Counted from the stretch's first letter, positions 38,143 through 64,000 are shown. The stretch is DNA of 64,000 nt from Macrostomum lignano (GCA_002269645.1 NIVC01000200.1:248001-312000), one strand, 5' to 3'. Notes: generated from the letters alone by a model not told the origin. Translations and numbers: made by a program.

Positions 38143-39795
38143 ATGAGCCGCAAAAGCTCCAGCGACAGCTCGAGTTCGGACGCGCCTCCCGCTACCCCAA
38201 TTTCTCTCTGCCTCATCTGCGACCAAGCTGCAGTCGGTGTGGCTCCGTTCTCCCGCTGCCACATGTGCAGTCAACACCTCAGTGTCGATGTGGCCAATCT
38301 ATTCAAGCTCAAGGAGGAGGTCGATGAGATGCTGCGTGCCTACTCACAAGAGTCACAAGACTCACAAGAGTCTCAAGGCGCAGCAGGTGCAGCTGGCCGT
38401 GCAGCGGTGCTGCGACACCGACAAGACGCGGAGTCGCTGCGTCGTCTCGCTCTCGACATCCAACAGCAGCTGCAAGAGGTCAATCACAAATTCGATTTGG
38501 TACAGCAACACATCGACTCGTTTCGTAGCAGGGTGACGGGCCAGCTCTCAGGTGTGCTTGAGGCAGTGCGTGTGTGCGAGCGGGACCTCGAGGACGTCTC
38601 CAGCTACAAGCAGGAGGTGGCCACGGCGGAGGCTGCAGGCGACATGGCGGAGCTGCTTCGCCTGGTCCAGTCCATGCACGAATCGCTTGGAGACTTGGAG
38701 GCCGACTTTGAGAGGTCAGAGCGCCTGCTCAGAGACCAGAGCGACAATGAGGAGCTGCAGCTGCGGCTTCTGGGCCAGCTCGAGCGGCTGGTCGGCATTT
38801 GTGCGGGACGCAGCGAAGATCAGGGTGACTGGTTGAGAGACGCTTCGGTGACCGCGACATCCGAGGAGATTGATGCTGCTAAGAAAAAGAGAATGTTGGA
38901 GCCGATGGTCTTCAGTCACGCGGTGAAGCTGGATGGCAATGTTGAGTGGCTGGTTGTGTGCAGCGACACCAGCGGATTCGTTGGTGACCGCTCAGGCCTT
39001 GTGGTTACAGCCGACTCAGCGGGAGACGACAGCAAGGCTCTGCCTCAGCCCTGCATTATTGCCTCGTTATATTCGAATAGAGACTGCCTACTGGTGCTGT
39101 CTGTGGACGGCTCACAAAAGCTGCGGTGCCACTGCGACATCGACTGGAATGAAAGCATCTGTGGCCTTCACTGCGACCGTCAGCTACTGTTCATTGCTCA
39201 GCCTGACGCAGTGACAGTGACGGACCTGAGCGGTCGCAAGGTGCGTCGAGTCCGCCCTCACATCAAGGGCTTCGGTGACATCTGGGGAATCGGCGGCAAC
39301 ACAGCCTCCGTGTTTGTGTCCAGTGGAAACAAAATTGCTGCATTCAGCAAAGCGACTTGGCAGATGGAGACGGTCATCACGCTGTCTCAGCTTCCTCATG
39401 CTAATCTGGGCAACCTGGCGACTCACGACAACTGCATTCTGGTGACAGACAGGGTGCAAAATAAGGTGCACAGAGTGCGCATCGACACCCAGCAGCTGGT
39501 CGCCTCCTTTCCGACTCAGCGTTCAGGCCTCCAAAAGTTTGCTTATCCAATTGATGTGGCCGTCGACAGCAGAGGCCGCCTGTTCGTGAGTGAATGGTTG
39601 GGTCACTCAGTGCGAGCGGTGGCTGCAGACGACGGGTCGCTGCTGTGGACTCTGGGGACTCCGGGCGAGAGAGGCAGCGGAGACGGCAGATTCGTCTGTC
39701 CACGAGGTCTGGCGGTGGTGACGGGAGGTCCGCACGAGCAGCTGGTGGTGGCTTACAGAGGCAACAGGAGACTGCAGGTGTTCAGTGCATCCTAA
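38143..39795 (+). CDS. Zn-finger/coiled-coil/NHL-repeat protein (RING-less TRIM-NHL-like), copy 1, intact, 550 aa
   Basis: Single-exon ORF; CxxC-x12-CxxCxxH N-terminus, heptad-rich coiled coil, NHL blades (FAYPIDVAVDSRGRLFVSE, GSGDGRFVCPRGLAV, VAYRGNRRLQVF). The in-frame ATG at 38143 matches the paralogues. Confidence 0.9.
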   Translation: MSRKSSSDSSSSDAPPATPISLCLICDQAAVGVAPFSRCHMCSQHLSVDVANLFKLKEEVDEMLRAYSQESQDSQESQGAAGAAGRAAVLRHRQDAESLRRLALDIQQQLQEVNHKFDLVQQHIDSFRSRVTGQLSGVLEAVRVCERDLEDVSSYKQEVATAEAAGDMAELLRLVQSMHESLGDLEADFERSERLLRDQSDNEELQLRLLGQLERLVGICAGRSEDQGDWLRDASVTATSEEIDAAKKKRMLEPMVFSHAVKLDGNVEWLVVCSDTSGFVGDRSGLVVTADSAGDDSKALPQPCIIASLYSNRDCLLVLSVDGSQKLRCHCDIDWNESICGLHCDRQLLFIAQPDAVTVTDLSGRKVRRVRPHIKGFGDIWGIGGNTASVFVSSGNKIAAFSKATWQMETVITLSQLPHANLGNLATHDNCILVTDRVQNKVHRVRIDTQQLVASFPTQRSGLQKFAYPIDVAVDSRGRLFVSEWLGHSVRAVAADDGSLLWTLGTPGERGSGDGRFVCPRGLAVVTGGPHEQLVVAYRGNRRLQVFSAS

Positions 39796-41072
39796 AATTA
39801 TTCACAGGCCAAATAAATAATCGATTTTTGGGGTTTCTGGAGTGATTGATTTATTGGAGACTGGGTATTTTTGATTGTGTTTTTTGAAACAAATTTAAAC
39901 TTGGATAACTTTTTTGTCGAATAAGTGTTTATTATGTCCATTATATTCAGAATAAATATTTATTGAATAGAAGCACATTTACCATTACGTATGTACTAAT
40001 AAAAATAAACGTTGGCCCTCAACACTTCTCTCATGGTCTTTATTTTTCTTGAAGTTTCAGCAGCAGAAATTCGTACCTGATTGTTGAATTGAATTTCAGC
40101 AAAAATGGCATGCAGCTTGCTTAAATTCTCCTCACTCGCTGCAGACTCAGCGCTCGCTTCTGTTTTGCATTTTCCTCAATGGTTTCCTGCTTTGCCTTTT
40201 ATAGCATGGCATAGGTAGCTTTAGCCATGGTAATAAATATTTGACTAGCTTTCAACCTGAGACTGCAGCAGTAGGCGTTCTACCCGTCTGGCTCCTGCTA
40301 CGAGACCGGCTTTCCAGCTTCTGTTTTGTGGTGAGGGTGTGAGGCTTTTGTATTTTTCACGCAACCACCCTGGGCGGCTTGTCTCGTACGATAAATAGAC
40401 GAACGCGAATACAACTTTTACTGTGCTGTTTATTCTGTAGGCTCTTGGGCTGAGCTCTTCTATATAGAATACTGCAGTGCTGGCTTCTTTCTTGACTTTG
40501 TCTTATGAGGGAATGTCACATGGTTTAACAGTGAATAGGTTTTACATGAAAAAGTTCCACAGTGAATGGGGATCTGAGCAGTTAATATAATGATGGAGAT
40601 GGACACCTAAGCAAGATGTCGGTTTTGACCCTCGCACGGAGGTCAAGGGTGAGTCGAACACGGGCCAGTTGTGAGAAATGGATTAAAATCAGCTACGGCA
40701 TGACACGCGAACAACGGGCGGCCTTGACCTGTCCTTGACCGGCGTCGCCAAACCAGCAAATGACGTCACCTGCTTAGCAGCGCTGTGATTGGCTAGAAAA
40801 ATGTGGAGGGGTTGGGAAACAAGTCACGTGATTATTGATGGGAATAGGTTACGGAGATCGGGGTAAACAATGCTGATCTAAAGGTCAGGGTGGGGTGGGT
40901 GTACGTGATGAGTGATTGATGATTCATCGGGAAAAGGGGCTTGGGATCCCTGAGTTGGGACCATGCAGGGTCGCGTCTACAATTTGGGGCTCTTTAACAT
41001 TGAAAATGAATGAGTGGCTGCCAAAACCGCTGCTGCATCAGAAGCTGAGGGACTTTAACTGACTTCATGCGG

Positions 41073-41375
41073 TATAGCGACTGTGGCATGATTGCCAATC
41101 ACACATGCTGCATAGCGACTGTGGCATGATTGCCAATCACACATGCTGCATAGCGACTGTGGCATGATTGCCAATCACACATGCTGCATAGCGACTGTGG
41201 CATGATTGCCAATCACACATGCTGCATAGCGACTGTGGCATGATTGCCAATCACACATGCTGCATAGCGACTGCGGCATGATTGCCAATCAGACATGCTG
41301 CATAGCGACTGCGGCGTGATTGCCAATCACACATGCTGCATAGCGACTGCGGCGTGATTGCCAATAAGACATGAC
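41073..41375. repeat. Minisatellite, 38-bp unit
   Basis: gcatagcgactgtggcatgattgccaatcacacatgct, about 7-8 copies. Confidence 0.95.
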
Positions 41376-42293
41376 AGCAGCTGATTGATCGAATCGAGGA
41401 AGTAGAGGCGAAGTCAGAATTTTTCATTTGGTTGGGATGCCAGATTTTGTCTGTTAAGAGCTGGATTGGTACAAAACAATATACATAAAAATATATCGCC
41501 AGTGCATTTAGTGTGTTCGCTAGAAATGAGATTTTTTTCCACTAAATTTGTCTGCCGTGAGTTGGCTGCAGAAGAAGACCTTCAAACCTTCGAACATTGC
41601 GGCGTCACGTCTTCCACCGCATCCTGGGCGATCCTGCGAGCACTTTAAAGCATTGAAACACCGTTTCTCCTGAGCATGCTAAATGCACTGGCGATACGGC
41701 AGATCTACGTTTCTACAGCGGGCTTAATCGGCTTGGCTGTCGCTCATGCTGCATCAGAGTGCAGCTTCCTCTCCCATTCCAGTGCAGACTTAAAGCCGGC
41801 GGGACATACAGCAGAACAGCGATACAGTGCAGTCAGTAGCAGAGCCAGTGTACAGCCCTACCGCAATATGAATGGAAAGTACTGAACAGGGCGGCTCTCT
41901 GCCCGCTGAGTACAGCAAACTGGAGATAAAGAATCTGCGATGCTCAATGCCTGCACAGGGCAGACAGACTGGGAGAGAGGAGCTGCATTGTCATTGCGAC
42001 AGGCTGCTCAGCTCCCCACTATGACCACCTCAGCAGCTTTGGCTGATTTGAATTTTGAATCATTATAAAAACACATTTTCTCTAAAATAATCAATAAAAA
42101 CAAAATTCAACCTCGTCTGACAGCTTTTACTCTACGTAATTTAATTTAATATTAACATCAAGTTGACATCAAAACAGCTGCGCAACCGTTTCCTTGGAAG
42201 AGGGCACCGATTGAAGCAGATCTGACTGTGTTTCGCTTTGTGGAAACTCTGCATTGAAAAGAATTTTCTAAATAGAAAACTCCCTGACAAACA

Positions 42294-43957
42294 ATGAGTC
42301 TTGGAGACTCCAGCGACAGCTCGAGTTCGGACGCGCCTCCCGCTTCCCCAACTCCTCTCTGCATCATCTGCGACCAAGCTGCAGTCGGTGTGGCTCCGTT
42401 CTCCCGCTGCCACATGTGCAGTCAACACCTCAGTGTCGATGTGGCCAATCTATTCAAGCTCAAGGAGGAGGTCGACGAGCTGCTGCGTGCCTACTCACAA
42501 GAGTCACAAGAGTCACAAGACTCACAATGCGCAGCAGATGCAGCTGGTCGTGCAGCGCTGCTGCGACACCGACAAGACGCTGAGTCGCTGCGTCGTCTCG
42601 CTCTCGACATCCAACAGCAGCTGCAAGAGGTCAATCACAAATTCGATTTGGTACAGCAACACATCGACTCGTTTCGTAGCAGGGTGACGGGCCAGCTCTC
42701 AGGTGTGCTTGAGGCAGTGCGTGTGTGCGAGCGGGACCTCGAGGACGTCTCCAGCTACAAGCAGGAGGTGGCCACGGCGGAGGCTGCAGGCGACATGGCG
42801 GAGCTGCTTCGCCTGGTCCAGTACATGCACGAATCGCTTGGAGACTTGGAGGCCGACTTTGAGAGGTCAGAGCGCCTGCTCAGAGACCAGAGCGACAATG
42901 AGGAGCTGCAGCTGCGGCTTCTGGGCCAGCTCGAGCGGCTGGTCGGCATTTGTGCGGGACGCAGCGAAGATCAGGGTGACTGGTTGAGAGACGCTTCGGT
43001 GACCGCGACATCCGAGGAGATTGATGCTGCTAAGAAAAAGAGAATGTTGGAGCCGATGATCTTCAGTCATGAGGTGAAGCTGGATGACCGTATTGCATGG
43101 CTGGCTGTGTGCAGCGACACCAGCCGATTCGTTGGTGACCGCTCAGGCCGTGTGGTTCCCGCCGATACTGAAGGAGACGGCAGTGAGGCTCTGCCTCAGC
43201 CATGCGTCATTGCATCATTCCTTAGGAATAAAGACCACCTACTGGTGCTGTCTGTGTGCTGTCTGTGGACGGCTCACAGAAGCTGCGGTGCCACTGCGAC
43301 ATCGACTGGGAGAAGGTCATCCGTGGCCTTCACTGCGACCGTCAGCTGCTGTTCATTGCTCAGCCTGGCGCAGTTACAGTGACGGACCTGAGCGGTCGCA
43401 CGGTGCGTCGAGTCCGCCCACACATCGAGAGCTTCAGTGACATCAGGGGAATCGGCGGCAACACAGCCTCCGTGTTTGTGTCCAGTGGAAACAAAATTGC
43501 TGCATTCAGCAAAGCGACTTGGCAGATGGAGACGGTCATCACGCTGTCTCAGCTTCCTCGTGCTGATCTGGGCAACCTGGCGACTCTCGACAACTGCATT
43601 CTGGTGACAGACTTGGAGAATGATCAGGTGCACAGAGTGCGCATCGACACCCAGCAGCTGGTCGCCTCCTTTCCGACTCAGCGTTCCGGCCTCCAACAGT
43701 TTGTTTGGCCATATGATGTGGCCGTCAACAGCAGAGGCCGCCTGTTCGTGAGTGAATGGTTGGGTCACTCAGTGCGAGCGGTGGCTGCAGACGACGAGTC
43801 GCTGTTGTTGACTCTGGGGACTCCGGGCAAGAGCGGCAGCGGAGACGGCAGATTCCAGTATCCACTGGGTCTGGCGGTGGTGACGGGAGGTCCGCGCGAG
43901 CAGCTGGTGGTGGCTGACAGAAACAACAGGAGATTGCAGGTGTTCAGTCCACCCTAA
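42294..43957 (+). pseudogene. Zn-finger/coiled-coil/NHL protein, copy 2, frameshifted
   Basis: Collinear with copy 1. An 11-bp tandem duplication gtgctgtctgt (43245-43255 / 43256-43266) shifts the frame; the NHL blades continue intact in ORF 43256-43957. Confidence 0.85.
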
Positions 43958-44204
43958 TTTTGTTCACAGGCGGATTAATAATCGAACTTTGCGGCTTCTG
44001 GAGTGATTGATTTATTGGAGGCCGGGTTTTTTGTCGAATTTCTCTTATTATGGAATTTAATATGTTAAGACCTTTTTGTACATGTACTTATACATGTATT
44101 AAGTAATTATAACAAAATTACGTTGGCGCTAAACAATTCTCTCATTGTGTGTCGTTTTCCGACTGACTGTCTCCTATTCTAGCATTAAGCAGCATCAGCG
44201 TCCT

Positions 44205-44370
44205 TGTCTCTCATCAGCTCCATCAACACCCAGTCTCTCTCATCAGCTCCATCAACACCCAGTCTCTCATCAGCACCATCAACACCCAGTCTCTCATCAG
44301 CTCCATCAACACCCAGTCTCTCATCAGCTCCATCAACACCCAGTCTCTCATCAGCTCCATCAACACAGTC
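44205..44370. repeat. 27-bp minisatellite downstream of GLO1 (related array at 50515-50805)
   Basis: ctcatcagctccatcaacacccagtct units in both copies of the duplicated segment. Confidence 0.9.
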
Positions 44371-44768
44371 TCCATCTGCCCCGAATTCATCCCCATTGAG
44401 TTCAGAGTCAAAACCAAGTAGAGAAAACAATTTTTACATTTATGATTGACAATATTTGAGTAATCAGATTTACTAGTAAAATATTTCTGAGTGGGATAAA
44501 GCGGATTTATTTTGATTATTCGAAATTCAGATTAAAGTTCGCCTCTGTCAGCAACAACTTGAAGGTGAATTGCAGAAAGGCAGGTATAAAATGATCAGTT
44601 TTAAGGCAAAGACAGTCACTGATTTGGTGCAGTGCGGTACATCAGAATTCGCTAACAGCTGAGGGCGCAAAGGGCGGTGCAGCACAGAAGAGCAGAGAGG
44701 AGGACTGACGGCTGCAGTCACTGCCGCTGTGGGCTGTCAAATTTATGAGCTGCAGCTGAGCATCCTTG

Positions 44769-45709
44769 TCAGTCCACCTTGGCGATCTCCACCATCCTGC
44801 CGGCATTGAGGATTTCAATCCAGTAGCCGTCAGGGTCCAGAATGAAGGCGAGGCCCTTCATCTTGCCGTCGTCCGGCTTCTTGGCGAACTTCACGCCGAG
44901 TCGCTCGAAACGCCTGCAGGCCTCGGCGACATCCGGGACGCTGATGCCGATGTGGCCGAAGCCGCGGGGGTCCGAGTTGCCGTTGTGGTAGGCCTGGCAA
45001 TGGGATTAGTGTGGGATGGCAATGGGATTAGTGTGGGATGGCAATGGGACTGGTGTGGGACGGCAATGGGATTGGTGTGGGATGGCAATGGGATTGGTGT
45101 GGGATGGCAATGGGATTGGGACATTGGGACTCAGCAGTCCAGACACTGGGACTCAGCAGTCCAGACAATGGGACTCAGCAGACCAGACACTGGGACTCAG
45201 CAGTCCAGACACTGGGATTCAGCAGTCCAGACACTGGGATTCAGCAGTCCAGACACTGGGACTCAGCAGTCCAGACACTGGGACTCAGCAGTCCAGACAC
45301 TGGGACTCAGCAGTCCAGACACTGGGACTCAGCAGTCCAGACATTGGGACTCAGCAGTCCAGACACTGGGATTCAGCAGTCCATGAACACACACCTGGTC
45401 AGGGTCAGACTCTGTCCCATAGTTGTGCGTCAGCTCCACAGTCCCCGGCAGCCTGAACAGGTAGGCGATGCGCTCCGTGTCGCCCTTAGGAATGCTGGCC
45501 TCCTCAGCGTAGCCCATGAAGTACAGCGAGAACGCCATGCTGGGGAAGTCGAACTTGCCGAGCAGCCGCATCCCCAGCACTGAGGAATAAAAGTCCAGCG
45601 ACCGGCGAGGGTCCTTGACTCGCAGCATCGTCTGCTGCATGATGAAGCCGCTGGTCTCGGGCGGTGGCGGCTTGCACAGAGCGGCGAGCTCAGATTTTGA
45701 TAGGGCCAT
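44769..45709 (-). CDS. GLO1: Lactoylglutathione lyase (glyoxalase I), 179 aa, two coding exons
   Basis: Exon 45395-45709 ([42 protein letters not shown]) and exon 44769-44993 ([31 protein letters not shown]). Phase-0 GT-AG intron; metal-ligand Q/E/H/E motifs present. Confidence 0.95.
44995..45385. repeat. GLO1 intron made of two abutting 22-bp minisatellites
   Basis: gggattggtgtgggatggcaat (44995-45120), then gggactcagcagtccagacact (45125-45385). Confidence 0.93.
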
Positions 45710-45779
45710 GATTGATTGACAGGTGACAGCTGGTTGCCAGGTGGGGGATTGGGGTTGGGATTGGAGTGCTGAATGTGAC

Positions 45780-46110
45780 TGATTGGCATCTGAATATGGC
45801 ACTGACTGACACTTGAATATGGCACTGATTGACACCTGAATATGACAATGATTGACACCTGAATATGGCACTGATTGACACCTGAATATGGCACTGACTG
45901 ACACCTGAATATGGCACTGATTGACACCTGAATATGGCACTGATTGACACCTGAATATTGCACTGACTGACACCTGAATATGGCACTGATTGACACCTGA
46001 ATATGGCACTGATTGACACCTGAATATGGCACTGATTGACACCTGAATATGGCACTGATTGACACCTGAATATGGCACTGATTGACACCTGAATATAGCA
46101 CTGACTGACA
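45780..46110. repeat. Minisatellite, 23-bp unit
   Basis: tgattgacacctgaatatggcac in tandem upstream of the GLO1 ATG. Confidence 0.95.
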
Positions 46111-47033
46111 CTAATTATGCTAACAATTATCAAATAAATTGAACACTCAAGGCTTCAGTTTCGCAGTCGCACTGAAGCAAGGAAAATCTTCCCCCAAGCT
46201 GCAGTTGCTGCCCAGATGCAGCCACAGCTCGCATGCCAATTTGTATTCAGACTCACCGGCACTGCAGCAATGCGATGGCCGATTGGCTATAATTGACAGG
46301 CAACAGAAATCATGCACTGGTATTGCTCAGCTTTTGACAGAATGCATGAAAATTACAGTAAGGAAAACGCTACTGACTACTAACAGTGGTAGGGAAGTGA
46401 CACACCAGCTTAGAAACCTACCGCAAATTAAAGTACATTCGGAGACTAAATGATGAGAACAATATCAATATGAAAACTTAAACTAATGCAAAGGGACTGG
46501 GGTATTCAACAACAGACATGCATATTGAGAACAACTGAAGGTCAATTATTCAAGCCTCTTAGTTGAAAAGTTGCTACTGTTAGTAACAAAACAGTAGCAA
46601 AGTACATAATGTACTTATAGATGATAACTTTGACTGACTTACAAAAATCATAACAGCATTTGTGGCTGATGGGTTAAGCTGCAGATACAGGAGGATGTGC
46701 TTGAAATATTTAATGACTGTTAATGAGCTGTTAAAATGCACTGAATCTTTATTAAGCATTCGGGACTGAGTGACATGAATATTAGGGTTTCTGAGGCTAA
46801 GATTAGTCTATCAGATGATCCACAATCTGGTCACACATCTATCAGATTATCCTCAATCTGGTCACAGATCTATCAGATGATCCACAATCTGGTCACAGAT
46901 CTATCAGATGATCCTCAATCTGGTCATAGATCTATCAGATTATCCACAATCTGGTCACACATCTATCAGATGATCTACCAGCCAATATCCAACAGAAACT
47001 GGGCCACAGCAGTCCCCACTGCACCCCACAAGA

Positions 47034-49746: not shown

Positions 49747-50269
49747 ATGAGCCGCAGAAGCTCCAGCGAAAGCTCGAGTTCGGACGCGCCTCCCGCTACC
49801 CCTACTCCTCTCTGCATCATCTGCGACCAAGCTTCCGTCGGTGTGGCTCCGTTCTCCCGCTGCCAGATGTGCAGTCAACACCTCAGTGTCGATGTGGCCA
49901 ATCTATTCAAGCTCAAGGAGGAGGTCGAAGAGCTGCTGCGTGTCTACTCACAAGAGTCACAAGAGCCACAAGAGTCACAAGAGTCACAAGGCGCAGCAGG
50001 TGCAGCTGGCCGTGCAGCGCTGCTGCGACACCGACAAGACGCTGAGTCGCTGCGTCGTCTCGCTCTCGACATCCAACAGCAGCTGCAAGAGGTCAATCAC
50101 AAATTCGATTTGGTACAGCAACACATCGACTCGTTTCGTAGCAGGGTGACGGGCCAGCTCTCAGGTGTGCTTGAGGCAGTGCGTGTGTGCGAGCGGGACC
50201 TCGAGGACGTCTCCAGCTACAAGCAGGAGGTGGCCACAGCGGAGGCTGCAGGCGACATGGCGGAGCTGC
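49747..50269 (+). pseudogene. Zn-finger/coiled-coil/NHL protein, copy 3, truncated by an internal deletion
   Basis: Collinear with copy 1 up to ..GDMAEL (50269), then fused to tcagcgctcgcttctgtgttgcattttc, which lies ~300 bp downstream of the stop in copies 1 and 4. The whole NHL domain is lost. Confidence 0.88.
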
Positions 50270-51204: not shown

Positions 51205-51429
51205 TCAGTCCCCCTTGGCGATCTCCACCATCCTGCCGGCATTGAGGATTTCAATCCAGTAGCCGTCAGGGTCCAGAATGGAGGCGAGGCCCTTCATCTT
51301 GCCGTCGTCCGGCTTCTTGGCGAACTTCACGCCGAGTCGGTCGAAACGCCTGCAGGCCTCGGCGACATCCGGGACGCTGATGCCGATGTGGCCGAAGCCG
51401 CGGGGGTCCGAGTTGCCGTTGTGGTAGGC
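51205..51429 (-). pseudogene. GLO1: Orphan duplicate of GLO1 exon 2
   Basis: Nearly identical to 44769-44993 (E>D, F>S in [11 protein letters not shown]>G), with duplicated 3' flank. No exon 1 upstream; the sequence after 51950 is unrelated. Confidence 0.85.
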
Positions 51430-55591: not shown

Positions 55592-55945
55592 CTGTGCTCA
55601 GTTGGGGTCAGGGATGGGGCAGCTCATGTGAGCATGTAGGGCCACACCTGTGCTCAGTTGGGGTCAGGGATGGGGCAGCTCATGTGAGCATGTAGGGCCA
55701 CACCTGTGCTCAGTTGGGGTCAGGGATGGGGCAGCAAATGTGAGCATGTAGGGCCACACCTGTGCTCAGTTCAGGGATGGGGCAGCTCATGTGAGCATGT
55801 AGGGCCACACCTGTGCTCAGTTGGGGTCAGGGATGGGGCAGCTCATGTGAGCATGTAGGGCCACACCTGTGCTCAGTTCAGGGATGGGGCAGCTCATGTG
55901 AAAATGAAGGGCCGCACCTGTGCTCAGTTGGGGTCAGGGATGGGA
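55570..55945 (-). repeat. 51/56-bp tandem repeat of the iGluR intron-exon junction
   Basis: Each unit is ccctgaccccaactgagcacAG|GTGTGGCCCTACATGCTCACA (minus strand); copies begin at 55591, 55647, 55703, 55759, 55810, 55866, 55917. Confidence 0.92.
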
Positions 55946-56419: not shown

Positions 56420-56680
56420 TGTCTCCCACCTGACCTGAGTCTCCACCTGACCTGAGTCTCCACCTGACCTGAGTCTCCCACCTGACCTGAGTCTCCCACC
56501 TGACCTGAGTCTCCCACCTGACCTGAGTCTCCCATCTGACCTGAGTCTCCCACCTGATCTGAGTCTCCCACCTGACCTGAGTCTCCCACCTGACCTGAGT
56601 CTCCCACCTGACCTGAGTCTCCCACCTGACCTGAGTCTCCCACCTGACCTGAGTCTCCCACCTGACCTGAGTATCCCATC
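56420..56680. repeat. Minisatellite, 18-bp unit, just upstream of NHL copy 4
   Basis: cccacctgacctgagtct in tandem. Confidence 0.95.
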
Positions 56681-56708
56681 CTGTCAGAAATTCAGATCGC
56701 TACACAAG

Positions 56709-58367
56709 ATGAGCCTCAAGAACTCCAGCGACAGCTCGAGTTCGGACGCGCCTCCCGCTACCCCAACTCCTCTCTGCATCATCTGCGACCAAGCTGCAGT
56801 CGGTGTGGCTCCGTTCTCCCGCTGCCACATGTGCAGTCAACACCTCAATGTCGATGTGGCCAATCTATTCAAGCTCAAGGAGGAGGTCGACGAGCTGCTG
56901 CGTGCCTACTCGCAAGAGTTTCAAGAGTCACAGGAGTCACAAGAGTCACAAGGCGCAGCAGGTGCAGCTGGCCGTGCAGCGCTGCTGCGACACCGAAAAG
57001 ACGCTGAGTCGCTGCGTCGTCTCGCTCTCGACATCCAACAGCAGCTGCAAGAGGTCAATCACAAATTCGATTTGGTACAGCAACACATCGACTCGTTTCG
57101 TAGCAGGGTGACGGGCCAGCTCTCAGGTGTGCTTGAGTCAGTCCGTGTGTGCGAGCGGGACCTCGAGGACGTCTCCAGCTACAAGAAGGAGGTGGCCACG
57201 GCGGAGGCTGCAGGCGACATGGCGGAGCTGCTTCGCCTGGTCCAGTCCATGCACGAATCGCTTGGAGACTTGGAGGCCGACTTTGAGAGGTCAGAGCGCC
57301 TGCTCAGAGACCAGAGCGACAATGAGGAGGTGCAGGTGCGGCTTCTGGGCCAGCTCGAGCGGCTGGTCGGCATTTGTGCGGGACGCAGTGAAGAGGACAA
57401 CTGGTCGAGAGACGCTGCGGTCACTGCGACATCCGAGGAGATAGACGCTACTGAGAGAGAGAGAATGTTGGAGCCGATGGTCTTCAGTCACAAGGTGAAG
57501 CTGGATGGCCTTGTTGCATTGCTGGCTGTGTGCAGCGACACCAGCGGATTCGTTGGTGACCGCTCAGGCCGTGTGGTTCCCGCAGACTCAGCGCGAGACG
57601 GAAGCAAGGCTCTGCCTCAGCCCTGCATCCTGGTAACATTTCTTATCAACAGAGACCCCCTACTGGTGCTGTCTGTGGACGGCTCACAGAAGCTGCGGTG
57701 CCACTGCGACACCGACCGGAAAAAGTACATCTGTGGCCTTCATTGCGACCGTCAGCTGCTGTGCATTGCTCAGTCTGACGCAGTGACAGTGACGGACCTG
57801 AGCGGTCGCGCGGTGCATGAAATCCGCCCACACATCGAGGGCTTCGGTGACATCTGTGGAATCGGCGGCAACGCAGCCTCCGTGTTTGTGTCCAGTGGAA
57901 ACAAAATTGCTGCATTCAGCAAAGCGACTTGGCAGATGGAGACGGTAATCACGCTGTCTTTGCTTCCTCGTGCTCGACTGGGTCATCTGACGACTCACGC
58001 CAACTTCATTCTAGTGATAGACTTTCAGCACAATCAGGTGCACAGAGTGCGCATCGACACCCAGCAGCTGGTCGCCTCCTTCCCGACTCAGCGTTCCGGC
58101 CTCCAACAGTTTGCTGGTCCAGCAGATGTGGCCGTCGATAGCAGAGGCTGCCTGTTCGTGAGTGACAACCATGGTCACTCAGTGCAAGCGGTGGCTGCAG
58201 ACGATGGGTCGCTGCTGTGGACTCTGGGGACTCCGGATGAGAGCGGCAGAGAAGACGGCAGATTCTGGCATCCATTGGGTCTGGCGGTGGTGAAGGGAGG
58301 TCCGCGCGAGCAGCTGGTGGTGGCTGACAATGGCAACAGCAGACTGCAGGTGTTCAGTGCACCCTAG
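56709..58367 (+). CDS. Zn-finger/coiled-coil/NHL protein, copy 4, intact, 552 aa
   Basis: Single-exon ORF collinear with copy 1; NHL blades FAGPADVAVDSRGCLFVSD, DGRFWHPLGLAV, VADNGNSRLQVF. Confidence 0.9.
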   Translation: MSLKNSSDSSSSDAPPATPTPLCIICDQAAVGVAPFSRCHMCSQHLNVDVANLFKLKEEVDELLRAYSQEFQESQESQESQGAAGAAGRAALLRHRKDAESLRRLALDIQQQLQEVNHKFDLVQQHIDSFRSRVTGQLSGVLESVRVCERDLEDVSSYKKEVATAEAAGDMAELLRLVQSMHESLGDLEADFERSERLLRDQSDNEEVQVRLLGQLERLVGICAGRSEEDNWSRDAAVTATSEEIDATERERMLEPMVFSHKVKLDGLVALLAVCSDTSGFVGDRSGRVVPADSARDGSKALPQPCILVTFLINRDPLLVLSVDGSQKLRCHCDTDRKKYICGLHCDRQLLCIAQSDAVTVTDLSGRAVHEIRPHIEGFGDICGIGGNAASVFVSSGNKIAAFSKATWQMETVITLSLLPRARLGHLTTHANFILVIDFQHNQVHRVRIDTQQLVASFPTQRSGLQQFAGPADVAVDSRGCLFVSDNHGHSVQAVAADDGSLLWTLGTPDESGREDGRFWHPLGLAVVKGGPREQLVVADNGNSRLQVFSAP

Positions 58368-59570: not shown

Positions 59571-60274
59571 ATCGAGGTAAAAAAATCTGATGCAGAATAA
59601 ATAACGGAGGCTGCAGGTGGGCGAAAAAAGAAGTAAGGTAGGTTTAAGTTTAAGTGATTCATTGATTCATTTCAGTAGTAATTAGCCCCTGTTCATTAGC
59701 CGTTAGTCAAAATTCATGAGTTCCTAGTCACAATTGATGAGTCATTAGTCATAGTTCATTAGTCACAGTTTATTAGTAATAAGTCACGGTTCATTAGTCA
59801 TTAGTGCCAAGGTGTCGACAAGCCAGCGGGAGCCGTGGCTGAGGATCACGGCGGTGGGCTCTCAATTCTTAGAATCTGTCTCAGTACGAGTATTATCCCT
59901 ACTCTCGCCTCTCCCCCACTGATTGCAAGCGCTTCGAACACCCCTGGAGATCAGAAAGCTTTGCGATCCCCCAGTCACTTTCAACTCTATTTTCCCCGGA
60001 GATCTGAGCTTGCCGTGCGATCTCCGCAGAGGGTCTGAGCTGGGTTGCAGTCTCTGGCCTGTTTTGAGTATTGATATTGATTTTATTAGCTGAAGTTTGC
60101 TTCTGCATCTCTCTGGGAGTCATTTTTGATTAAATAAACACAAGAAATTCATGTTTCAGAAAGTAGATTTTTTTAGAAGCCGTGAAAGCGGAGTTTAATT
60201 TTCCAATGCAAACAACATGCTCAAGTAGATGTGGTTGAAGTTGATGCTCAAGTTGCCTGTCCTTTTCTGTAATT

Positions 60275-60570
60275 CACTGCTTGTCATTTCCTGTAATTCA
60301 CTGCTTGTCCATTTCTGTAATTCACTGCTTGTCCATTTCTGTAATTCACTGCTTGTCCATTTCTGTAATTCACTGCTTGTCCATTTCTGTAATTCACTGC
60401 TTGTCCATTTCTGTAATTCACTGCTTGTCCATTTCTGTAATTCACTGCTTGTCCATTTCTGTAATTCACTGCTTGTCCATTTCTGTAATTCACTGCTTGT
60501 CCATTTCTGTAATTCACTGCTTGTCCATTTCTGTAATTCACTGCTTGTCCATTTCTGTAATCCACTGCTT
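60275..60570. repeat. Minisatellite, 24-bp unit
   Basis: gtccatttctgtaattcactgctt, about 12 copies. Confidence 0.96.
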
Positions 60571-61094
60571 TCTAGGAATGTCAATTGGATGAAGCTCTTC
60601 TTGACGAGACGAGGCTCGTTTACTGACCACCTTACACCTTGAGCACAATGAGGTGACCGTCTCTACAATATGCGTCACAAAAACATCGCTACAATAGCTG
60701 GTTGTAAAAGCCGTCGTTCTTTTTAGCCCAAGGTGACTCGATTCAATTTGCATCCCCTCCAATATGCGGTTCACATCCTCCTCCGACTGAGTCACCTTTC
60801 GAACTTTCTCTGATCGTCAATAACGAGCAGATAACGAGATTGTCTGATAGCGAGCTGAGATCGCAAAGTGAAACTTACTTTTGTTCTTTTCCATCTTAGG
60901 GGCCGGGGTTCGCAGTTTTTTAAATGTGACTCTTGTTCTCAAGGGTCCTGCAGGGATGCTTCGGTCACCTCACAGTAGCTCGGTGCTCACCTGAAGTTCG
61001 TCAGAGTCCTCGAGTCCTCGTCGCCTCTGTCGTTAAGAGCGCCATGTCGAGATTGAAAATCTGACACAACAGTTTTACGATAGACTACGTTCTC

Positions 61095-61790
61095 TTGATA
61101 GTGTTCACAGTGACTATAGTGAGTCTTGATAGTGTTCACAGTGACTATGGTGAGTCTGGATAGTGTTCACAGTGACTATGGTGAGTCTGGATAGTGTTCA
61201 CAGTGACTATGGTGAGTCTGGATAGTGTTCACAGTGACTATGGTGAGTCTGGATAGTGTTCACAGTGACTATAGTGAGTCTTGATAGTGTTCACAGTGAC
61301 TATAGTGAGTCTTGATAGTGTTCACAGTGACTATAGTGAGTCCTGATAGTGTTCACAGTGACTATAGTGAGTCCTGATAGTGTTCACAGTGACTATAGTG
61401 AGTCTTGATAGTGTTCACAGTGACTATGGTGAGTCTGGATAGTGTTCACAGTGACTATGGTGAGTCTGGATAGTGTTCACAGTGACTATGGTGAGTCTGG
61501 ATAGTGTTCACAGTGACTATGGTGAGTCTGGATAGTGTTCACAGTGACTATAGTGAGTCTTGATAGTGTTCACAGTGACTATAGTGAGTCTTGATAGTGT
61601 TCACAGTGACTATAGTGAGTCTTGATAGTGTTCACAGTGACTATAGTGAGTCCTGATAGTGTTCACAGTGACTATAGTGAGTCTTGATAGTGCTCACAGT
61701 ATCTAGTGAGTCTTAGTGTTCACACTGACTACTGTGAGTCTTGATAGTGTTCACTGTCACTATTGTGAGTCTTGATAGTGTTCACAGTGA
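61095..61790. repeat. Minisatellite, 31-bp unit
   Basis: gatagtgttcacagtgactat(a/g)gtgagtct(t/g), about 22 copies. Confidence 0.96.
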
Positions 61791-62736
61791 CCACAACTCA
61801 GTCGTTTGCACTGCACCCCCGTCACTGACCTACAGCTGTTCACTGGCTCCACCAGAGCCCAGATTCGAGCTCAGGACACTGGATTAGAAACGCTAGCTTC
61901 CAGGGCTGTGCTCACTCTAGCAATTCCAAATCACTCAATGTTACACCTGCACAGAACTCACTCTTGCGCACATCTCTCCTAAGCACATCTCTCCTGAGCA
62001 CATCTCTCCTAAGCACAGCTCTCCTGAGCACATCTCTCCTGAGCACATCTCTCCTAAGCACAGCTCTCAGCCCTCATCGCCTTCTCTCTCCCCACTCATT
62101 TCTCAGCCAGCAGTCTCCATTGTTACTGCAGGCCGCTCTGCACACGCGAGCTTCATCGCACAGCTGCTGGCAAAGTACACCAGACCGCAGGCTGCACACA
62201 CAGAAACGGAATGAGAGGCGCAGAGACTGCAGAGCTAAGCTGAGTGCAGCAGGAGTTGCCAGCCAGACCAACTCGGTCTCCGATGCACATTTCCAACATC
62301 GAATAGCTCGAAATTCGAATTTCGCACCGCTGCACAGACAAACAAAGTTAAATTAATAATTATCTGCAATCGAAAACTCACCCAGAACAGGTACCAGTGT
62401 GTGCTCAGTAATTTCTCAGACTGAGCATTCTTGCAGCTGCAGAGATGCAATTCTGTGACCTGCGATACTGGCACCGATTCAAAGTGTGTGGCACACTGGC
62501 TTTTGCAGAGCTCAGCACCCTTGCACTGGCAGCAGAGGATACTCAGCCCAGAATTCCTTGATCGGCACTGAACTCTCTGACTCGAAATCTGACTGCATTT
62601 CGCATTTGACAGGTGAGTCGGTTTCTGTTCTCCCCCTGTTCTCCTCTGTTCTCCCTCTATTCCGACTCTTCTCCCTCTTCTTACCCTAAGGCGTTTCAAC
62701 TTTTTCTGATTTCAGCTCTTCAAAGGCAATCCAACA

Positions 62737-64000
62737 ATGAGCCGCAAAAGCACCAGCGACAGCTCGAGTTCGGAAGCGCCTCCCGCTACCCCAACTCCTC
62801 TCTGCATCATCTGCGACCAAGCTGCAGTCGGTGTGGCTCCGTTCTCCCTCTCCCACATGTGCAGTCAGCACCTCAGTGTCGATGTGGCCAATCTATTCAA
62901 GCTCAAGGAGGAGGTCGATGAGCTGCTGCGTGCCTACTCACAAGAGTCGCAAGAGTCGCAAGGCGCAGCAGGTGCAGCTGGCCGTGCAGCGCTGCTGCGA
63001 CACCGACAAGACGCTGAGTCGCTGCGTCGTCTCGCTCTCGACATCCAACAGCAGCTGCAAGACGTCAATCACAAATTCGATTTGGTACAGCAACACATCG
63101 ACTCGTTTCGTAGCAGGGTGACGGGCCAGCTCTCAGGTGTGCTTGAGTCAGTCCGTGTGTGCGAGCGGGACCTCGAGGACGTCTCCAGCTACAAGCAGGA
63201 GGTGGCCACGGCCGAGGCTGCAGGCGACATGGCGGAGCTGCTTCGCCTGGTCCAGTCCATGCACGAATCGCTTGGAGACTTGGAGGCCGACTTTGAGAGG
63301 TCAGAGCGCCTGCTCAGAGACCAGCGCGACAATGAGGAGCTGCAGCTGCGGCTTCTGGGCCAGCTCGAGCGGCTGGTCGGCATTTGTGCGGGACGCAGTG
63401 AAGAGGGCGACTGGTCGAGAGACGCTGCGGTGACTGCGACATCCGAGGAGATAGACAGAGATATAGCTGCTCAGAGAGAGAGACTTTTGGAGCCGATGGT
63501 CTTCAGTCACGATGTGAAGCTGGATGACGATCCTGCATTGCTGGCTGTGTGCAGCGACACCAGCGGATTCGTTGGTAACCTCTCAGGCCGTGTGGTTCCC
63601 GCCGACTCAGCGGGAGACTGCAGCAAAACTCTGCCTCAACCCTGCATCATTGCATCATTCTATCTGAACAGAGACCACCTACTGCTGCTGTCTGTGAACG
63701 GCTCACAGAAGCTGCGGTGCCACTGCGACATCGACTGGAAGCAGTGCATCCGTGGCCTTCACTGCGACCGTCAACTGCTGTTTATTGCTCAGGATGACGC
63801 AGTGACAGTGACGGACCTGAGCGGTCGCAAGGTGCGTCGAGTCCGCCCACACATCGAGGGCTTCGGTGCCATCAGTGGAATCGGCGGCAACGCAGCCTCC
63901 GTGTTTGTGTCTAGTGGAAACAAAATTGCTGCATTCAGCAAAGCGACTTGGCAGATTGAGACGGTCATCACGCTGTCTCAGCTTCCTAATGCTAATCTGC
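62737..64000 (+). CDS. Zn-finger/coiled-coil/NHL protein, copy 5, open to the window end
   Basis: ATG at 62737 (MSRKSTSDSSSSEAPP..). I translated it without a stop to 64000 (..TLSQLPNANL). It is absent from the ORF track, presumably because no stop falls inside the window. Confidence 0.88.
   Translation, partial: MSRKSTSDSSSSEAPPATPTPLCIICDQAAVGVAPFSLSHMCSQHLSVDVANLFKLKEEVDELLRAYSQESQESQGAAGAAGRAALLRHRQDAESLRRLALDIQQQLQDVNHKFDLVQQHIDSFRSRVTGQLSGVLESVRVCERDLEDVSSYKQEVATAEAAGDMAELLRLVQSMHESLGDLEADFERSERLLRDQRDNEELQLRLLGQLERLVGICAGRSEEGDWSRDAAVTATSEEIDRDIAAQRERLLEPMVFSHDVKLDDDPALLAVCSDTSGFVGNLSGRVVPADSAGDCSKTLPQPCIIASFYLNRDHLLLLSVNGSQKLRCHCDIDWKQCIRGLHCDRQLLFIAQDDAVTVTDLSGRKVRRVRPHIEGFGAISGIGGNAASVFVSSGNKIAAFSKATWQIETVITLSQLPNANL

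What the first reader, a model, noticed from the sequence alone, without database searches (positions are those of the whole stretch)
38143..64000. Cluster of TRIM-NHL-like genes with conserved stalks and hypervariable loops across the propeller blades: candidate diversified recognition system
The five paralogues are nearly identical across the Zn-finger and coiled coil (only a handful of substitutions in ~230 aa). In the NHL domain they differ by whole-codon replacements set in near-identical flanks. Copies 1/2/4/5: DGNVEW/DDRIAW/DGLVAL/DDDPAL; SLYSN/SFLRN/TFLIN/SFYLN; WNESICG/WEKVIRG/RKKYICG/WKQCIRG; DIWG/DIRG/DICG/AISG; PHANLGN/PRADLGN/PRARLGH/PNANL. Copies 1/2/4: DRVQNK/DLENDQ/DFQHNQ; FAYPID/FVWPYD/FAGPAD; FVCPRG/FQYPLG/FWHPLG; YRGN/DRNN/DNGN. 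DNA example: GCT TAT CCA ATT / GTT TGG CCA TAT / GCT GGT CCA GCA. These positions are the loops before strand a and between strands b and c. In Brat and LIN-41 these loops form the top, ligand/RNA-binding face (established). The pattern matches diversifying selection on one binding surface, as in immune receptors or restriction factors. A variable intracellular pathogen- or RNA-recognition repertoire is an inference.
Basis: partly seen in the sequence, partly recalled or inferred. Interest (0 to 1): 0.88.

Follow-up and report, generated by a model that had tools for sequence, protein, structure and literature searches.

The report
Hypervariable NHL-propeller gene cluster in flatworm
A flatworm (Macrostomum lignano) carries a tandem cluster of near-identical intracellular proteins whose beta-propeller loops, at the positions where TRIM71 contacts RNA, are under very strong diversifying selection, which makes them a candidate variable recognition repertoire of unknown target.

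Summary
The window is Macrostomum lignano contig NIVC01000200.1. It carries intronless paralogues of a roughly 550-aa protein: a short Zn motif, a helical stalk and an NHL-like propeller.

- **Copies:** 1 and 4 are intact and copy 5 runs off the window but is intact. Copy 2 is a pseudogene with an 11-bp duplication. Copy 3 is an N-terminal fragment.
- **Cluster size:** it continues past the window, and I recovered nine intact paralogues with DNA.
- **Selection:** my own codon site models on the propeller give M0 ω=1.03. M1a/M2a LRT is 264 and M7/M8 LRT is 279, with about 11% of codons at ω≈10. This is stable on alternative, star and segment-specific trees.
- **Location:** 18 of 28 selected sites lie in d–a or b–c loops, including positions aligned to TRIM71 R796 and R751. 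Six lie in other loops of blades 1–2.
- **Stalk:** the Zn motif and coiled coil have no selected sites.
- **Gene conversion:** flanks of three copies are about 99–100% identical while their propellers differ by 8–10%, synonymous sites included, and a PHI-type test is significant. Conversion homogenises everything except the selected surface.
- **Hypermutation:** pseudogene and homeologue controls show no ongoing hypermutation.

No RING or Pfam B-box is detectable, and the blade count (6 or 7) is unresolved. Ligand and biological role are untested. I found no literature on the family.

The parts
38143..39795 (+). Copy 1 (c1): intact intronless gene, 550 aa. Ser/Asp-rich N-terminus, CX2CX15CX2H motif, helical stalk, NHL-like propeller.
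   Evidence: ORF and translation. tblastn reference copy. 100% match to a protein cluster on M. lignano contig NIVC01000200.1.
38209..38277 (+). Zn-binding-type motif of c1 (C23, C26, C42, H45, plus non-conserved C39/H40).
   Evidence: CX2(4)CX15CX2H is kept in 10 of 11 aligned distant M. lignano subfamilies (H replaced by Y in P0092, one sequence lacks this region). c5 and c7 have lost C39. No Pfam B-box or RING hit even at E<=10. UniRef labels relatives 'B box-type domain-containing'.
38269..38817 (+). Helical stalk (residues 43-225), a presumed coiled coil. Nearly invariant between paralogues.
   Evidence: AlphaFold2 DSSP helices 43-73, 84-165, 168-198 and 203-225, at low pLDDT. No selected sites between alignment columns 6 and 78 or 80 and 250. 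Third-position diversity at invariant codons is 0.022, against 0.066 in the propeller.
38908..39792 (+). NHL-like beta-propeller of c1 (residues 256-550). It carries 28 codons with posterior >0.9 for omega>1: residues 266, 268, 294, 296, 297, 310, 311, 313, 337, 338, 340, 354, 366, 381, 419, 421, 435, 437, 438, 468, 470, 485, 486, 518, 519, 539, 540, 542.
   Evidence: pLDDT about 90. Foldseek top hits are Thin, TRIM71 and TRIM2/3 NHL domains, TM 0.77-0.80. phmmer against PDB gives E=5.6e-19. Pfam NHL scores 17.8 bits for c1 and 34.9 bits for c4. Site models are, and the mapping.
38122..38129 (+). Pyrimidine-rich CAG acceptor-like site 13 nt upstream of the c1 ATG. Similar sites lie 11-22 nt upstream in most paralogues.
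   Evidence: Direct reading of aligned upstream sequences. Reading it as a cis- or trans-splice acceptor is inference.
39812..39817 (+). AATAAA polyadenylation-like signal 17 nt after the c1 stop codon, conserved in position in the other copies.
39796..42293 (+). 3' flank of c1, shared with c5 and c7 at 98.4-98.5% overall. Positions 40133-41294 show 0-1 mismatches per 150 nt. It belongs to a roughly 11-kb higher-order repeat unit.
   Evidence: The same flank is only about 80% identical next to paralogues of other clusters.
42294..43957 (+). Copy 2 (c2): pseudogene with an 11-bp tandem duplication (about 43245-43255) causing a frameshift. It still carries its own set of loop residues.
   Evidence: Its duplicate c6, outside the window, differs by only 4 substitutions and 1 indel in the CDS.
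49783..50268 (+). Copy 3 (c3): N-terminal fragment (aa 13-171) with no propeller.
   Evidence: tblastn.
56709..58367 (+). Copy 4 (c4): intact gene, 552 aa.
62737..64000 (+). Copy 5 (c5): cut by the window end, intact 549 aa in the extended locus. Its Zn motif has RC->LS.
   Evidence: L003 30444-32093; L003 coordinate + 32293 = window coordinate.

Best explanation
This is a young, Macrostomum-specific tandem family of cytoplasmic proteins. Each has a short CCCH zinc motif, a long helical stalk that probably dimerises, and a C-terminal NHL-like beta-propeller.

**Shown.** The family evolves by two processes acting together. Frequent duplication and gene conversion keep the flanks, the 5' end and the stalk almost identical. 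Strong diversifying selection keeps replacing residues at about 28 codons, most of them in the blade-connecting (d-a) and b-c loops of the propeller. One selected site (Y468) is homologous to TRIM71 R796, an RNA-groove contact, and the 4-state position R521 aligns with R751. The result is a germline-encoded set of propellers that share a scaffold and differ in one main binding surface. The variable positions are rich in Trp, Tyr and Arg.

**Inferred.** Each paralogue binds a different ligand, RNA or protein, through that surface. All of them feed into the same downstream partner through the invariant stalk. Because the coiled coils are nearly identical, paralogues could heterodimerise and so multiply the number of combinations. 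The most likely selective agent is a fast-evolving antagonist such as a virus, transposon or other parasite. That would make this an NHL-based counterpart of TRIM5/finTRIM or of the fungal HET-E/D WD40 receptors.
For: **Organism and copies**
- Identity of the contig and copy positions.
- Nine intact paralogues share a star-like tree.

**Selection on the propeller**
- M0 omega is 1.03.
- M2a puts 11.2% of sites at omega 10.4, LRT 264.
- LRT is 277 on the N-half tree and 350 on a star tree.
- M7/M8 LRT is 279.
- Four 75-77-codon segments (columns 271-572), each on its own tree, give LRT 47-85.
- At the 30 most variable propeller columns (4 or more residue states), pairwise differences are 0.55, 0.52 and 0.35 at codon positions 1, 2 and 3. 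Third positions of invariant codons differ by only 0.066.

**Location of the sites**
- 18 of 28 sites lie in d-a or b-c loops, odds ratio 4.8, p=1.4e-4.
- Y468 aligns with TRIM71 R796 (by repeat, R608), and R521, which is not among the 28 sites, with R751. PMC6719626 reports R608 and R796 in contact with the RNA hairpin; R751A abolishes reporter repression there.
- The variable positions are enriched for W (5x), Y (15x) and R (2.4x).
- The same positions are the least conserved in the wider superfamily.

**Concerted evolution**
- c1, c5 and c7 have flanks with 0-1 mismatches per 150 nt, against 8-26 per 150 nt in the propeller.
- The PHI-type test gives p<0.001 for the whole CDS and 0.004 for the propeller.
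- Nearest neighbours change from one alignment window to the next, and 34 of 75 c5/c7 differences have both alleles present in other copies.

**Genes look functional**
- ORFs are intact, about 53% of propeller codons have omega 0.16, and acceptor-like and poly(A) signals are conserved.
Against: - No expression, ligand or phenotype data were available, so the conflict or immune role is pure inference.
- The propeller is roughly neutral in net charge (-4 to +3 in eight copies, +11 in P10f). RNA-binding NHL domains have a strongly basic top surface, so RNA binding is not favoured over protein binding.
- Six selected sites (294-297, 310-313) lie in c-d or a-b loops of blades 1-2, and one (366) starts a d strand. 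The surface is therefore not strictly one face.
- I had no model coordinates. Face assignment rests on strand order and motif homology.
- The codon models are my own implementation. They assume one tree per segment and a constant synonymous rate. Recombination and the roughly 2-fold local rise in synonymous diversity inflate omega somewhat.
- The paralogue sample is incomplete.
Confidence: 0.6

Rival explanations
1. The evolutionary pattern is the same but the biology differs. The propellers diversify because of conflict within the species or through partitioning of endogenous targets. Examples are sperm or reproductive proteins under sexual conflict in this outcrossing hermaphrodite, or RNA-binding repressors that have divided up endogenous mRNA targets in germline or stem cells. 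No pathogen is involved.
For: TRIM-NHL proteins are classically germline and stem-cell RNA regulators (PMC5908797, PMC6719626, PMC9070667). The selected positions coincide with TRIM71 RNA-contact positions. Nothing in my data distinguishes the source of selection. That reproductive genes often show omega>1 is general knowledge and was not tested here.
Against: Subfunctionalised regulators of endogenous targets normally settle under purifying selection. They do not sustain omega near 10 with up to 8 residues at one site among 9 copies. There is no signal peptide-like hydrophobic N-terminus, as secreted seminal proteins would need (read directly from the sequence). The propeller lacks the strongly basic charge of RNA-binding NHLs.
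Confidence: 0.25
2. A targeted mutational mechanism, such as programmed hypermutation or templated micro-conversion aimed at the loop codons, generates the variability. Selection on ordinary mutations is not the cause.
For: Propeller synonymous diversity is three times that of the stalk, and it is about 2-fold higher again at and next to the hypervariable codons. Variable codons often differ at 2-3 nucleotides. Patches are shared in a mosaic fashion between paralogues, including the 48%-identical neighbour in L002. Pseudogene copies that could act as donors sit inside the cluster.
Against: The pseudogene pair c2/c6 lies in 99.4%-identical units and shows only 4 substitutions in 1.66 kb of CDS, no more than its flanks. 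The homeologous P10f pair shows 2 substitutions in 1222 bp of CDS against 11 in 2873 bp of flank. So the loops are not changing faster than neutral DNA on that timescale. Elevated divergence continues about 300 bp into the 3' UTR, which fits older haplotype blocks rather than codon targeting. Non-synonymous change exceeds synonymous change about 10-fold at the sites, and a mutational process alone does not give that.
Confidence: 0.07
3. Relaxed constraint or decay: redundant young duplicates are drifting towards pseudogenes, and surface loops simply tolerate change.
For: Three or four of the eight copies in the extended cluster are already pseudogenes or fragments. Whole-domain omega is about 1.
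Against: M1a already allows a neutral class and is rejected with LRT 264-350. The intact copies keep 53% of propeller codons at omega 0.16 and have uninterrupted ORFs. The changes concentrate at the same structural positions in every blade.
Confidence: 0.03
4. Assembly artefact: collapsed or chimeric consensus of a repetitive PacBio assembly creates false mosaics.
For: The region is highly repetitive. One GenBank gene model (P0003) is a chimera of two copies.
Against: Differences respect codon structure and blade periodicity, and ORFs stay open. An independent homeologous contig reproduces the P10f propeller with one amino-acid change. Older-assembly proteins (P0007-P0009) show further distinct loop sets.
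Confidence: 0.02

Closest known systems
TRIM-NHL proteins (TRIM71/LIN-41, TRIM2/3, TRIM32/Thin, Brat, Mei-P26, NHL-2)
   Same: The C-terminal propeller is their closest sequence and structure match. The order is zinc motif, long helical stalk, propeller. The first strand closes the last blade, as described for LIN41 (PMC5908797). The FxxPxG and b-c loop positions that vary here are those lining the TRIM71 RNA groove (PMC6719626, PMC9634614).
   Different: There is no RING and no detectable B-box or filamin domain. Only the last 2-3 repeats match the NHL profile. DSSP shows 27 strands, which fit seven blade-like units rather than six. The propeller is not strongly basic. TRIM-NHL genes are conserved, low-copy developmental regulators, not hypervariable tandem arrays.
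Fungal HET-E/HET-D/NWD (HNWD) NLRs with hypervariable WD40 propellers
   Same: The recognition module is a beta-propeller. Positive diversifying selection acts on a few positions per repeat that map to the interaction surface. This is combined with concerted evolution and sequence exchange within and between family members (PMC4986451).
   Different: In fungi the exchanged units are the highly similar WD repeats inside one gene, attached to NACHT/HET effector domains. Here the blades of one protein are dissimilar, whole paralogues are homogenised, and the N-terminal part is a Zn motif plus coiled coil. This is an animal, not a fungus.
TRIM5alpha / fish finTRIM and other multigene TRIMs with a positively selected B30.2 domain
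   Same: A conserved coiled-coil scaffold carries a C-terminal ligand-binding domain whose surface loops are under positive selection. These are lineage-specific tandem expansions (PMC3137616 for fish TRIMs; TRIM5 from general knowledge).
   Different: The variable domain there is B30.2/SPRY, not an NHL propeller. Those proteins retain RING and B-box and act as E3 ligases. An antiviral function is demonstrated for TRIM5alpha, and nothing has been demonstrated here.
Plant NB-LRR resistance-gene clusters
   Same: Tandem clusters, birth and death with pseudogenes, gene conversion between paralogues, and hypervariable solvent-exposed residues on an otherwise conserved repeat scaffold (general knowledge; mentioned in PMC4986451).
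   Different: An LRR solenoid with an NB-ARC switch, against a propeller with a coiled coil. The two are not homologous.

Membership tests
TRIM-NHL | N-terminal RING finger (absent in some members such as Brat) | tested here: not met
   No RING-type Pfam hit at E<=1 for c1 or c4. Only 22 residues precede the single CX2CX15CX2H motif.
TRIM-NHL | One or two B-box zinc fingers | tested here: inconclusive
   Pfam zf-B_box gives no hit even at E<=10 on full-length proteins or isolated N-termini of four subfamilies. UniRef nevertheless names several relatives 'B box-type domain-containing protein'. Only four ligands (CCCH) are conserved in the superfamily, fewer than a B-box needs.
TRIM-NHL | Coiled coil between the zinc fingers and the C-terminal domain | tested here: inconclusive
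   AlphaFold2 predicts about 180 helical residues (43-225), but at pLDDT 40-65. Dimerisation was not testable.
TRIM-NHL | C-terminal NHL-repeat beta-propeller | tested here: met
   Pfam NHL scores 34.9 bits for c4 (cut-off 20) and 17.8 bits for c1. phmmer against the PDB gives Thin 5.6e-19 and TRIM71 2e-15. The nine best Foldseek hits are all TRIM-NHL propellers, TM 0.75-0.80 on NHL-only chains (0.57 on the longer filamin-NHL LIN41 chains).
TRIM-NHL | Six four-stranded blades | tested here: inconclusive
   DSSP of the model gives 27 strands whose loop lengths and a/b/c sequence motifs fit seven units. Units 1 and 2 are short and lack a clear d strand. The rmsd of 3.1-3.7 A to six-bladed NHLs fits either count. 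No coordinates were available.
TRIM-NHL | Basic top surface that binds RNA | not testable with these tools
   Net charge of the propeller is -4 to +3 in eight copies and +11 in P10f. Variable positions are net positive in 8 of 9 copies. There are no electrostatics or binding data.
Diversified recognition families (TRIM5/finTRIM-type, fungal HNWD-type) | Lineage-specific multi-copy, clustered paralogues | tested here: met
   Eight copies lie in 49 kb here. Further clusters lie on the same contig and on NIVC01001900 and NIVC01000303. All full-length relatives carrying an organism name are M. lignano; the two unnamed ones sit on short JGI metagenome contigs.
Diversified recognition families (TRIM5/finTRIM-type, fungal HNWD-type) | omega>1 at a discrete subset of codons of the binding domain | tested here: met
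   M1a/M2a LRT 264-350, M7/M8 LRT 279, about 11% of codons at omega near 10.
Diversified recognition families (TRIM5/finTRIM-type, fungal HNWD-type) | Selected sites map to the ligand-binding surface | tested here: met
   18 of 28 are in d-a or b-c loops (p=1.4e-4) and 3 more are adjacent. One selected site (Y468) aligns with the TRIM71 RNA-contact Arg R796; R521, aligned with R751, has 4 residue states but is not among the 28 (PMC6719626). Six sites in blades 1-2 are exceptions.
Diversified recognition families (TRIM5/finTRIM-type, fungal HNWD-type) | Concerted evolution or gene conversion of the non-selected parts | tested here: met
   Flanks and stalk are about 99-100% identical, against 90% in the propeller, for c1/c5/c7. 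The PHI-type test is significant. The nearest-neighbour pattern is a mosaic.
Diversified recognition families (TRIM5/finTRIM-type, fungal HNWD-type) | Demonstrated role in non-self or pathogen recognition | not testable with these tools
   No expression or functional data, and no paper on the family.

The most novel reading that the evidence does not exclude
Macrostomum has a germline-encoded intracellular receptor repertoire built on NHL-like propellers. This would be the first case where the NHL fold, known otherwise from conserved developmental RNA regulators, serves as the variable module of an innate recognition system. Near-identical coiled-coil stalks let paralogues pair freely, giving combinatorial pairs of hypervariable propellers that recognise fast-evolving viral, transposon or parasite RNAs or proteins. 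Gene conversion from neighbouring genes and pseudogenes shuffles loop 'cassettes'.
Probability: 0.3. Interest if true: 0.85.

Novelty: new variant of a known kind. Interest (0 to 1): 0.66.

Why it matters
Flatworm innate immunity and genome defence are poorly known. Few diversified recognition families have been described in invertebrates (for example FREPs, Dscam and Sp185/333).

Here a well-understood RNA- and protein-binding scaffold shows one of the strongest site-specific selection signals one can expect. Up to 8 residues occur at one position among 9 copies, inside otherwise identical genes. The selected positions are homologous to TRIM71 RNA contacts.

Macrostomum lignano supports RNAi and transgenesis, so the idea is directly testable. 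The cluster is also a clean natural example of gene conversion and diversifying selection acting on adjacent parts of the same genes, with built-in pseudogene and homeologue controls.

If the ligands turn out to be endogenous or reproductive, it would instead reveal an unusual mode of rapid target turnover in the TRIM-NHL world.

Tried and rejected
1. **Recent duplication followed only by point mutation and selection.** Rejected. Synonymous divergence in the c5/c7 propeller is 0.089, against well under 1% divergence (0-1 mismatches per 150 nt from 40133 on) in their flanks. The propeller segments are therefore older than, or imported into, homogenised surroundings.

2. **Ongoing hypermutation.** Disfavoured by the c2/c6 pseudogene pair and the contig-303 homeologues.

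3. **Relaxed constraint.** Rejected by M1a versus M2a.

4. **Recombination as the cause of a false signal.** Tested with the N-half tree, a star tree and four segment-specific trees. The signal persists in all of them.

5. **B-box or RING detection with Pfam.** Nothing found on full-length proteins or on isolated N-termini of several subfamilies.

6. **Do other M. lignano subfamilies show the same hypervariability within their 90% clusters?** No. Those members are near-identical homeologues with few, scattered differences.

7. **Deciding 6 versus 7 blades and top versus bottom face directly.** Not possible, because the structure tool returns no coordinates. I used strand order, loop lengths and motif homology instead.

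8. **Literature searches.** Macrostomum combined with NHL, TRIM or propeller, and TRIM-NHL combined with positive selection, found nothing on this family.

9. **N-terminal half site test.** The apparent selected sites are only residues 4-5 and the indel-rich, alignment-uncertain linker before the propeller. None lies in the Zn motif or coiled coil.

Full report
**1. What is there**

The window is part of Macrostomum lignano contig NIVC01000200.1, record positions 248001-312000. Protein hits are all named BOX15_Mlig..., and the locus coordinates agree.

tblastn with the first ORF finds five plus-strand, intronless copies:
- c1, 38143-39795, intact, 550 aa.
- c2, 42294-43957, frameshifted.
- c3, 49783-50268, containing only residues 13-171.
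- c4, 56709-58367, intact, 552 aa.
- c5, from 62737, cut by the window end.

Fetching the surrounding DNA (L003 = window 32294-86562) shows the following:
- c5 is intact at 549 aa.
- The cluster continues with c6 (a duplicate of the c2 pseudogene), c7 (intact) and c8 (broken).
- The c2/c6 frameshift is an 11-bp tandem duplication. It is a real mutation, not a homopolymer error.
- Further intact paralogues lie in a second cluster 120-160 kb upstream on the same contig (P5, P6, P10f and a 48%-identical copy) and on NIVC01001900 (P2, P4).
- NIVC01000303 is a homeologous copy of the upstream cluster, 97.5-98.6% identical.

**2. The protein**

- **Domains found.** Pfam finds only NHL repeats, at 34.9 bits for c4 and 17.8 bits for c1. 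It finds no RING or B-box, even at E<=10 on isolated N-termini.
- **Zinc motif.** A CX2(4)CX15CX2H motif is conserved in all but one aligned subfamily of a larger superfamily known only from M. lignano and a few metagenome contigs, whose members are 27-57% identical and 500-580 aa long. The extra Cys39/His40 is not conserved and is lost in c5 and c7.
- **Predicted structure.** AlphaFold2 predicts about 180 helical residues (43-225) at low confidence. Residues 256-550 form a confident propeller with pLDDT about 90.
- **Closest structures.** The nearest solved structures are the NHL domains of Thin, TRIM71 and TRIM2/3, with TM 0.77-0.80. Sequence alone also finds them, at E=5.6e-19.
- **Blade closure.** The first strand (256-262) closes the last blade, as in LIN41 (PMC5908797).
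- **Blade count.** DSSP gives 27 strands. Their connection lengths and a/b/c motifs fit seven blade-like units, the first two short. Canonical NHL domains have six (PMC9634614). Without coordinates I leave this open.
- **Localisation.** There is no hydrophobic N-terminus, so the protein is presumably intracellular (direct reading).
- **Transcript signals.** A pyrimidine-CAG acceptor-like site lies 11-22 nt upstream of the ATG in most copies. An AATAAA-like signal lies about 17 nt after the stop. Both suggest real, processed transcripts, but this is inference.

**3. Is the variability more than chance?**

I aligned the nine intact genes by codon (572 columns).

- **Pairwise rates.** Nei-Gojobori rates are dN 0.039 and dS 0.059 in the N-terminal half. 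In the propeller they are dN 0.119 and dS 0.136.
- **Most variable columns.** Thirty propeller columns carry 4-8 residue states. Their pairwise differences are 0.55, 0.52 and 0.35 at codon positions 1, 2 and 3. Third positions of invariant propeller codons differ by 0.066.
- **Site models.** I wrote a Goldman-Yang site-model likelihood.
  - On the propeller, M0 gives omega 1.03.
  - M1a gives lnL -3643.0.
  - M2a gives lnL -3511.0, with 11.2% of codons at omega 10.4 and 53% at omega 0.16.
  - The LRT is 264, p about 5e-58.
  - M7/M8 gives LRT 279, with 11.3% of codons at omega 10.1.
- **Robustness to tree choice.**
  - The LRT is 277 on the N-half tree and 350 on a star tree.
  - It is 47-85 in each of four 75-77-codon segments (columns 271-572) fitted on their own trees.
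- **Synonymous-rate correction.** Synonymous differences between copies sharing a residue are about 2-fold higher at hypervariable codons (0.149 against 0.069). A conservative omega is therefore still about 5.
- **N-terminal part.** The only candidate sites are residues 4-5 and the indel-rich linker. None lies in the Zn motif or stalk.

**4. Where the sites are**

Twenty-eight codons have posterior >0.9. They were mapped to c1 residues and secondary structure.

- 18 lie in d-a (blade-connecting) or b-c loops, against 72 of 265 background positions. The odds ratio is 4.8 and p=1.4e-4.
- 3 more lie within two residues of such loops.
- In the canonical repeats they fall at positions P-2, P-1 and P+1 of FxxPxG, and in the D/E-x-x-N/G-x turn after strand b.
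- In the phmmer alignment to mouse/human TRIM71, c1 Y468 pairs with the Arg of 'FLRPQG', and by repeat with the Arg of 'LCRPWG'. The two Arg are 188 residues apart, as R608 and R796 are.
- c1 R521 pairs with the Arg of 'DSPRG', which is R751 by the same numbering; R521 has four residue states but is not among the 28 sites, and its repeat-equivalent I470 is.
[quoted passage not shown] PMC9634614 places these arginines on the top surface beside the central channel.
- There are exceptions. These would lie on the rim or the opposite face.
- Variable positions are enriched in Trp (5x), Tyr (15x), Arg (2.4x), Lys and Cys. They are net positive in 8 of 9 copies.
- The whole propeller is about neutral in charge.
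- The same positions are the least conserved across the superfamily, with a majority fraction of 0.26 against 0.51 (p=6e-10).

**5. How the pattern arose**

The cluster consists of roughly 11-kb higher-order units. These are U1 38118-49116, U2 62712-73687 and U3 74879-86020 in extended coordinates.

- **Propeller against flanks.**
  - For c1, c5 and c7 the 3' flank from 40133 to 41294 has 0-1 mismatches per 150 nt.
  - The c5/c7 upstream region is identical.
  - The stalk has 0-8 mismatches per 150 nt.
  - The linker and propeller have 8-26 per 150 nt, falling to 2-7 over the first 300 nt of 3' UTR.
- **Synonymous sites.**
  - They share this contrast, with c5/c7 propeller dS at 0.089.
  - The propeller is therefore not simply a recent duplicate that mutated fast. 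Its segments have deeper ancestry than the homogenised surroundings.
- **Evidence of exchange between copies.**
  - A PHI-type incompatibility test is significant, at p<0.001 for the whole CDS and 0.004 for the propeller.
  - The nearest paralogue changes every 25 codons.
  - 34 of 75 c5/c7 propeller differences have both alleles present in other copies.
- **Control 1, pseudogenes.**
  - The c2/c6 pair sits in units that are 99.4% identical.
  - It has only 4 substitutions and 1 indel in 1.66 kb of CDS, like its flanks.
- **Control 2, homeologues.**
  - The P10f pair has 2 substitutions in 1222 bp of CDS against 11 in 2873 bp of flank.
  - The P6 pair shows one small cluster at codons 374-401 that looks like a conversion tract.
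  - Members of other subfamilies within 90% clusters are near-identical.

The loops are thus stable on the homeologue timescale. The variability is germline-encoded between paralogues. It is maintained and renewed by selection, while conversion homogenises everything else.

**6. Interpretation**

*Shown:* a lineage-specific tandem family, a conserved scaffold, and omega far above 1 at loop positions homologous to a known NHL ligand site. Concerted evolution acts elsewhere, and pseudogenes show birth and death of copies.

*Inferred:* each propeller binds a different ligand, and the invariant stalk links all copies to one downstream function and may allow hetero-dimers. The driver would be a fast-evolving antagonist.

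*Rivals I cannot exclude:* a reproductive or endogenous-target role (0.25). A targeted mutational mechanism is unlikely (0.07). Neutral decay and assembly artefact are essentially excluded.

**7. Comparison and novelty**

- **By homology.** The propeller belongs with the TRIM-NHL proteins. The protein nevertheless fails or leaves open several family criteria, namely the RING, the B-box and possibly the blade number.
- **By mode of evolution.** It works like the fungal HET-E/D WD40 propellers, which combine positive selection on the interaction surface with concerted evolution (PMC4986451). It also resembles TRIM5/finTRIM B30.2 domains (PMC3137616) and plant R-gene clusters.
- **Literature.** I found no paper on this family, nor on hypervariable NHL domains.
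- **Rating.** I rate it a new variant of a known kind.

Noticed in passing
window 1-37000 (also 41066-41373, 45120-46111, 50518-51945, 53378-54235, 55569-55944, 60254-61791): The sequence upstream of the cluster and between copies consists largely of dozens of unrelated minisatellite arrays (periods 8-64 bp, up to 130 copies). Many are strongly strand-skewed, which explains the extreme GC and AT skews in the composition profile.
   Followed up: partly
window 44769-44894 (-), with further copies at L003 37118-38010 and 50037-51545: A glyoxalase-I-like gene (last exon '...[17 protein letters not shown]...') is carried inside each higher-order repeat unit, so it has been co-duplicated with the propeller genes.
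   Followed up: partly
window 56421-56683: An 18-bp tandem array (14.7 copies) runs to within about 25 nt of the c4 start codon. It reads through in frame as (PPDLSL)n. c4 therefore has a different upstream region from c1, c5 and c7.
   Followed up: no
window 38340-38400 and the equivalent region in other copies (alignment columns 69-82): The number of 9-bp SQE/SQD repeats in the N-terminal region varies from copy to copy (0 to about 5 units). It is an SQ-rich microsatellite inside the coding sequence.
   Followed up: no
c5 (window about 62845-62850) and c7 (L003): Two intact paralogues have Arg-Cys replaced by Leu-Ser inside the zinc motif. Across the superfamily only C23, C26, C42 and H45 are conserved, so the motif is a single CCCH site rather than a B-box.
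   Followed up: yes
L003 10001-44269 (window 42294 onward): The GenBank gene model behind protein P0003 is a chimera. It joins the N-terminus of the c2 pseudogene to the propeller of c5 across other copies, so public annotation of this cluster is unreliable.
   Followed up: partly
L006 (NIVC01000303.1) 6925-11149 and 17547-19206: On the homeologous contig the P10f orthologue is split by a roughly 2.6-kb insertion, and the P6 orthologue carries a 2-bp deletion. Different copies are being lost on the two homeologues.
   Followed up: partly
proteins P0014 and P0026 (JGI metagenome contigs of about 2 kb): Environmental metagenome contigs encode propellers 42-45% identical to this family. Related genes therefore exist in uncharacterised organisms, presumably other flatworms.
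   Followed up: no
L002 12616-14226: A 48%-identical family member sits between two members of the young subfamily and shares some loop motifs with its neighbours (for example NRPWG and FAWP). This hints at exchange between subfamilies.
   Followed up: no
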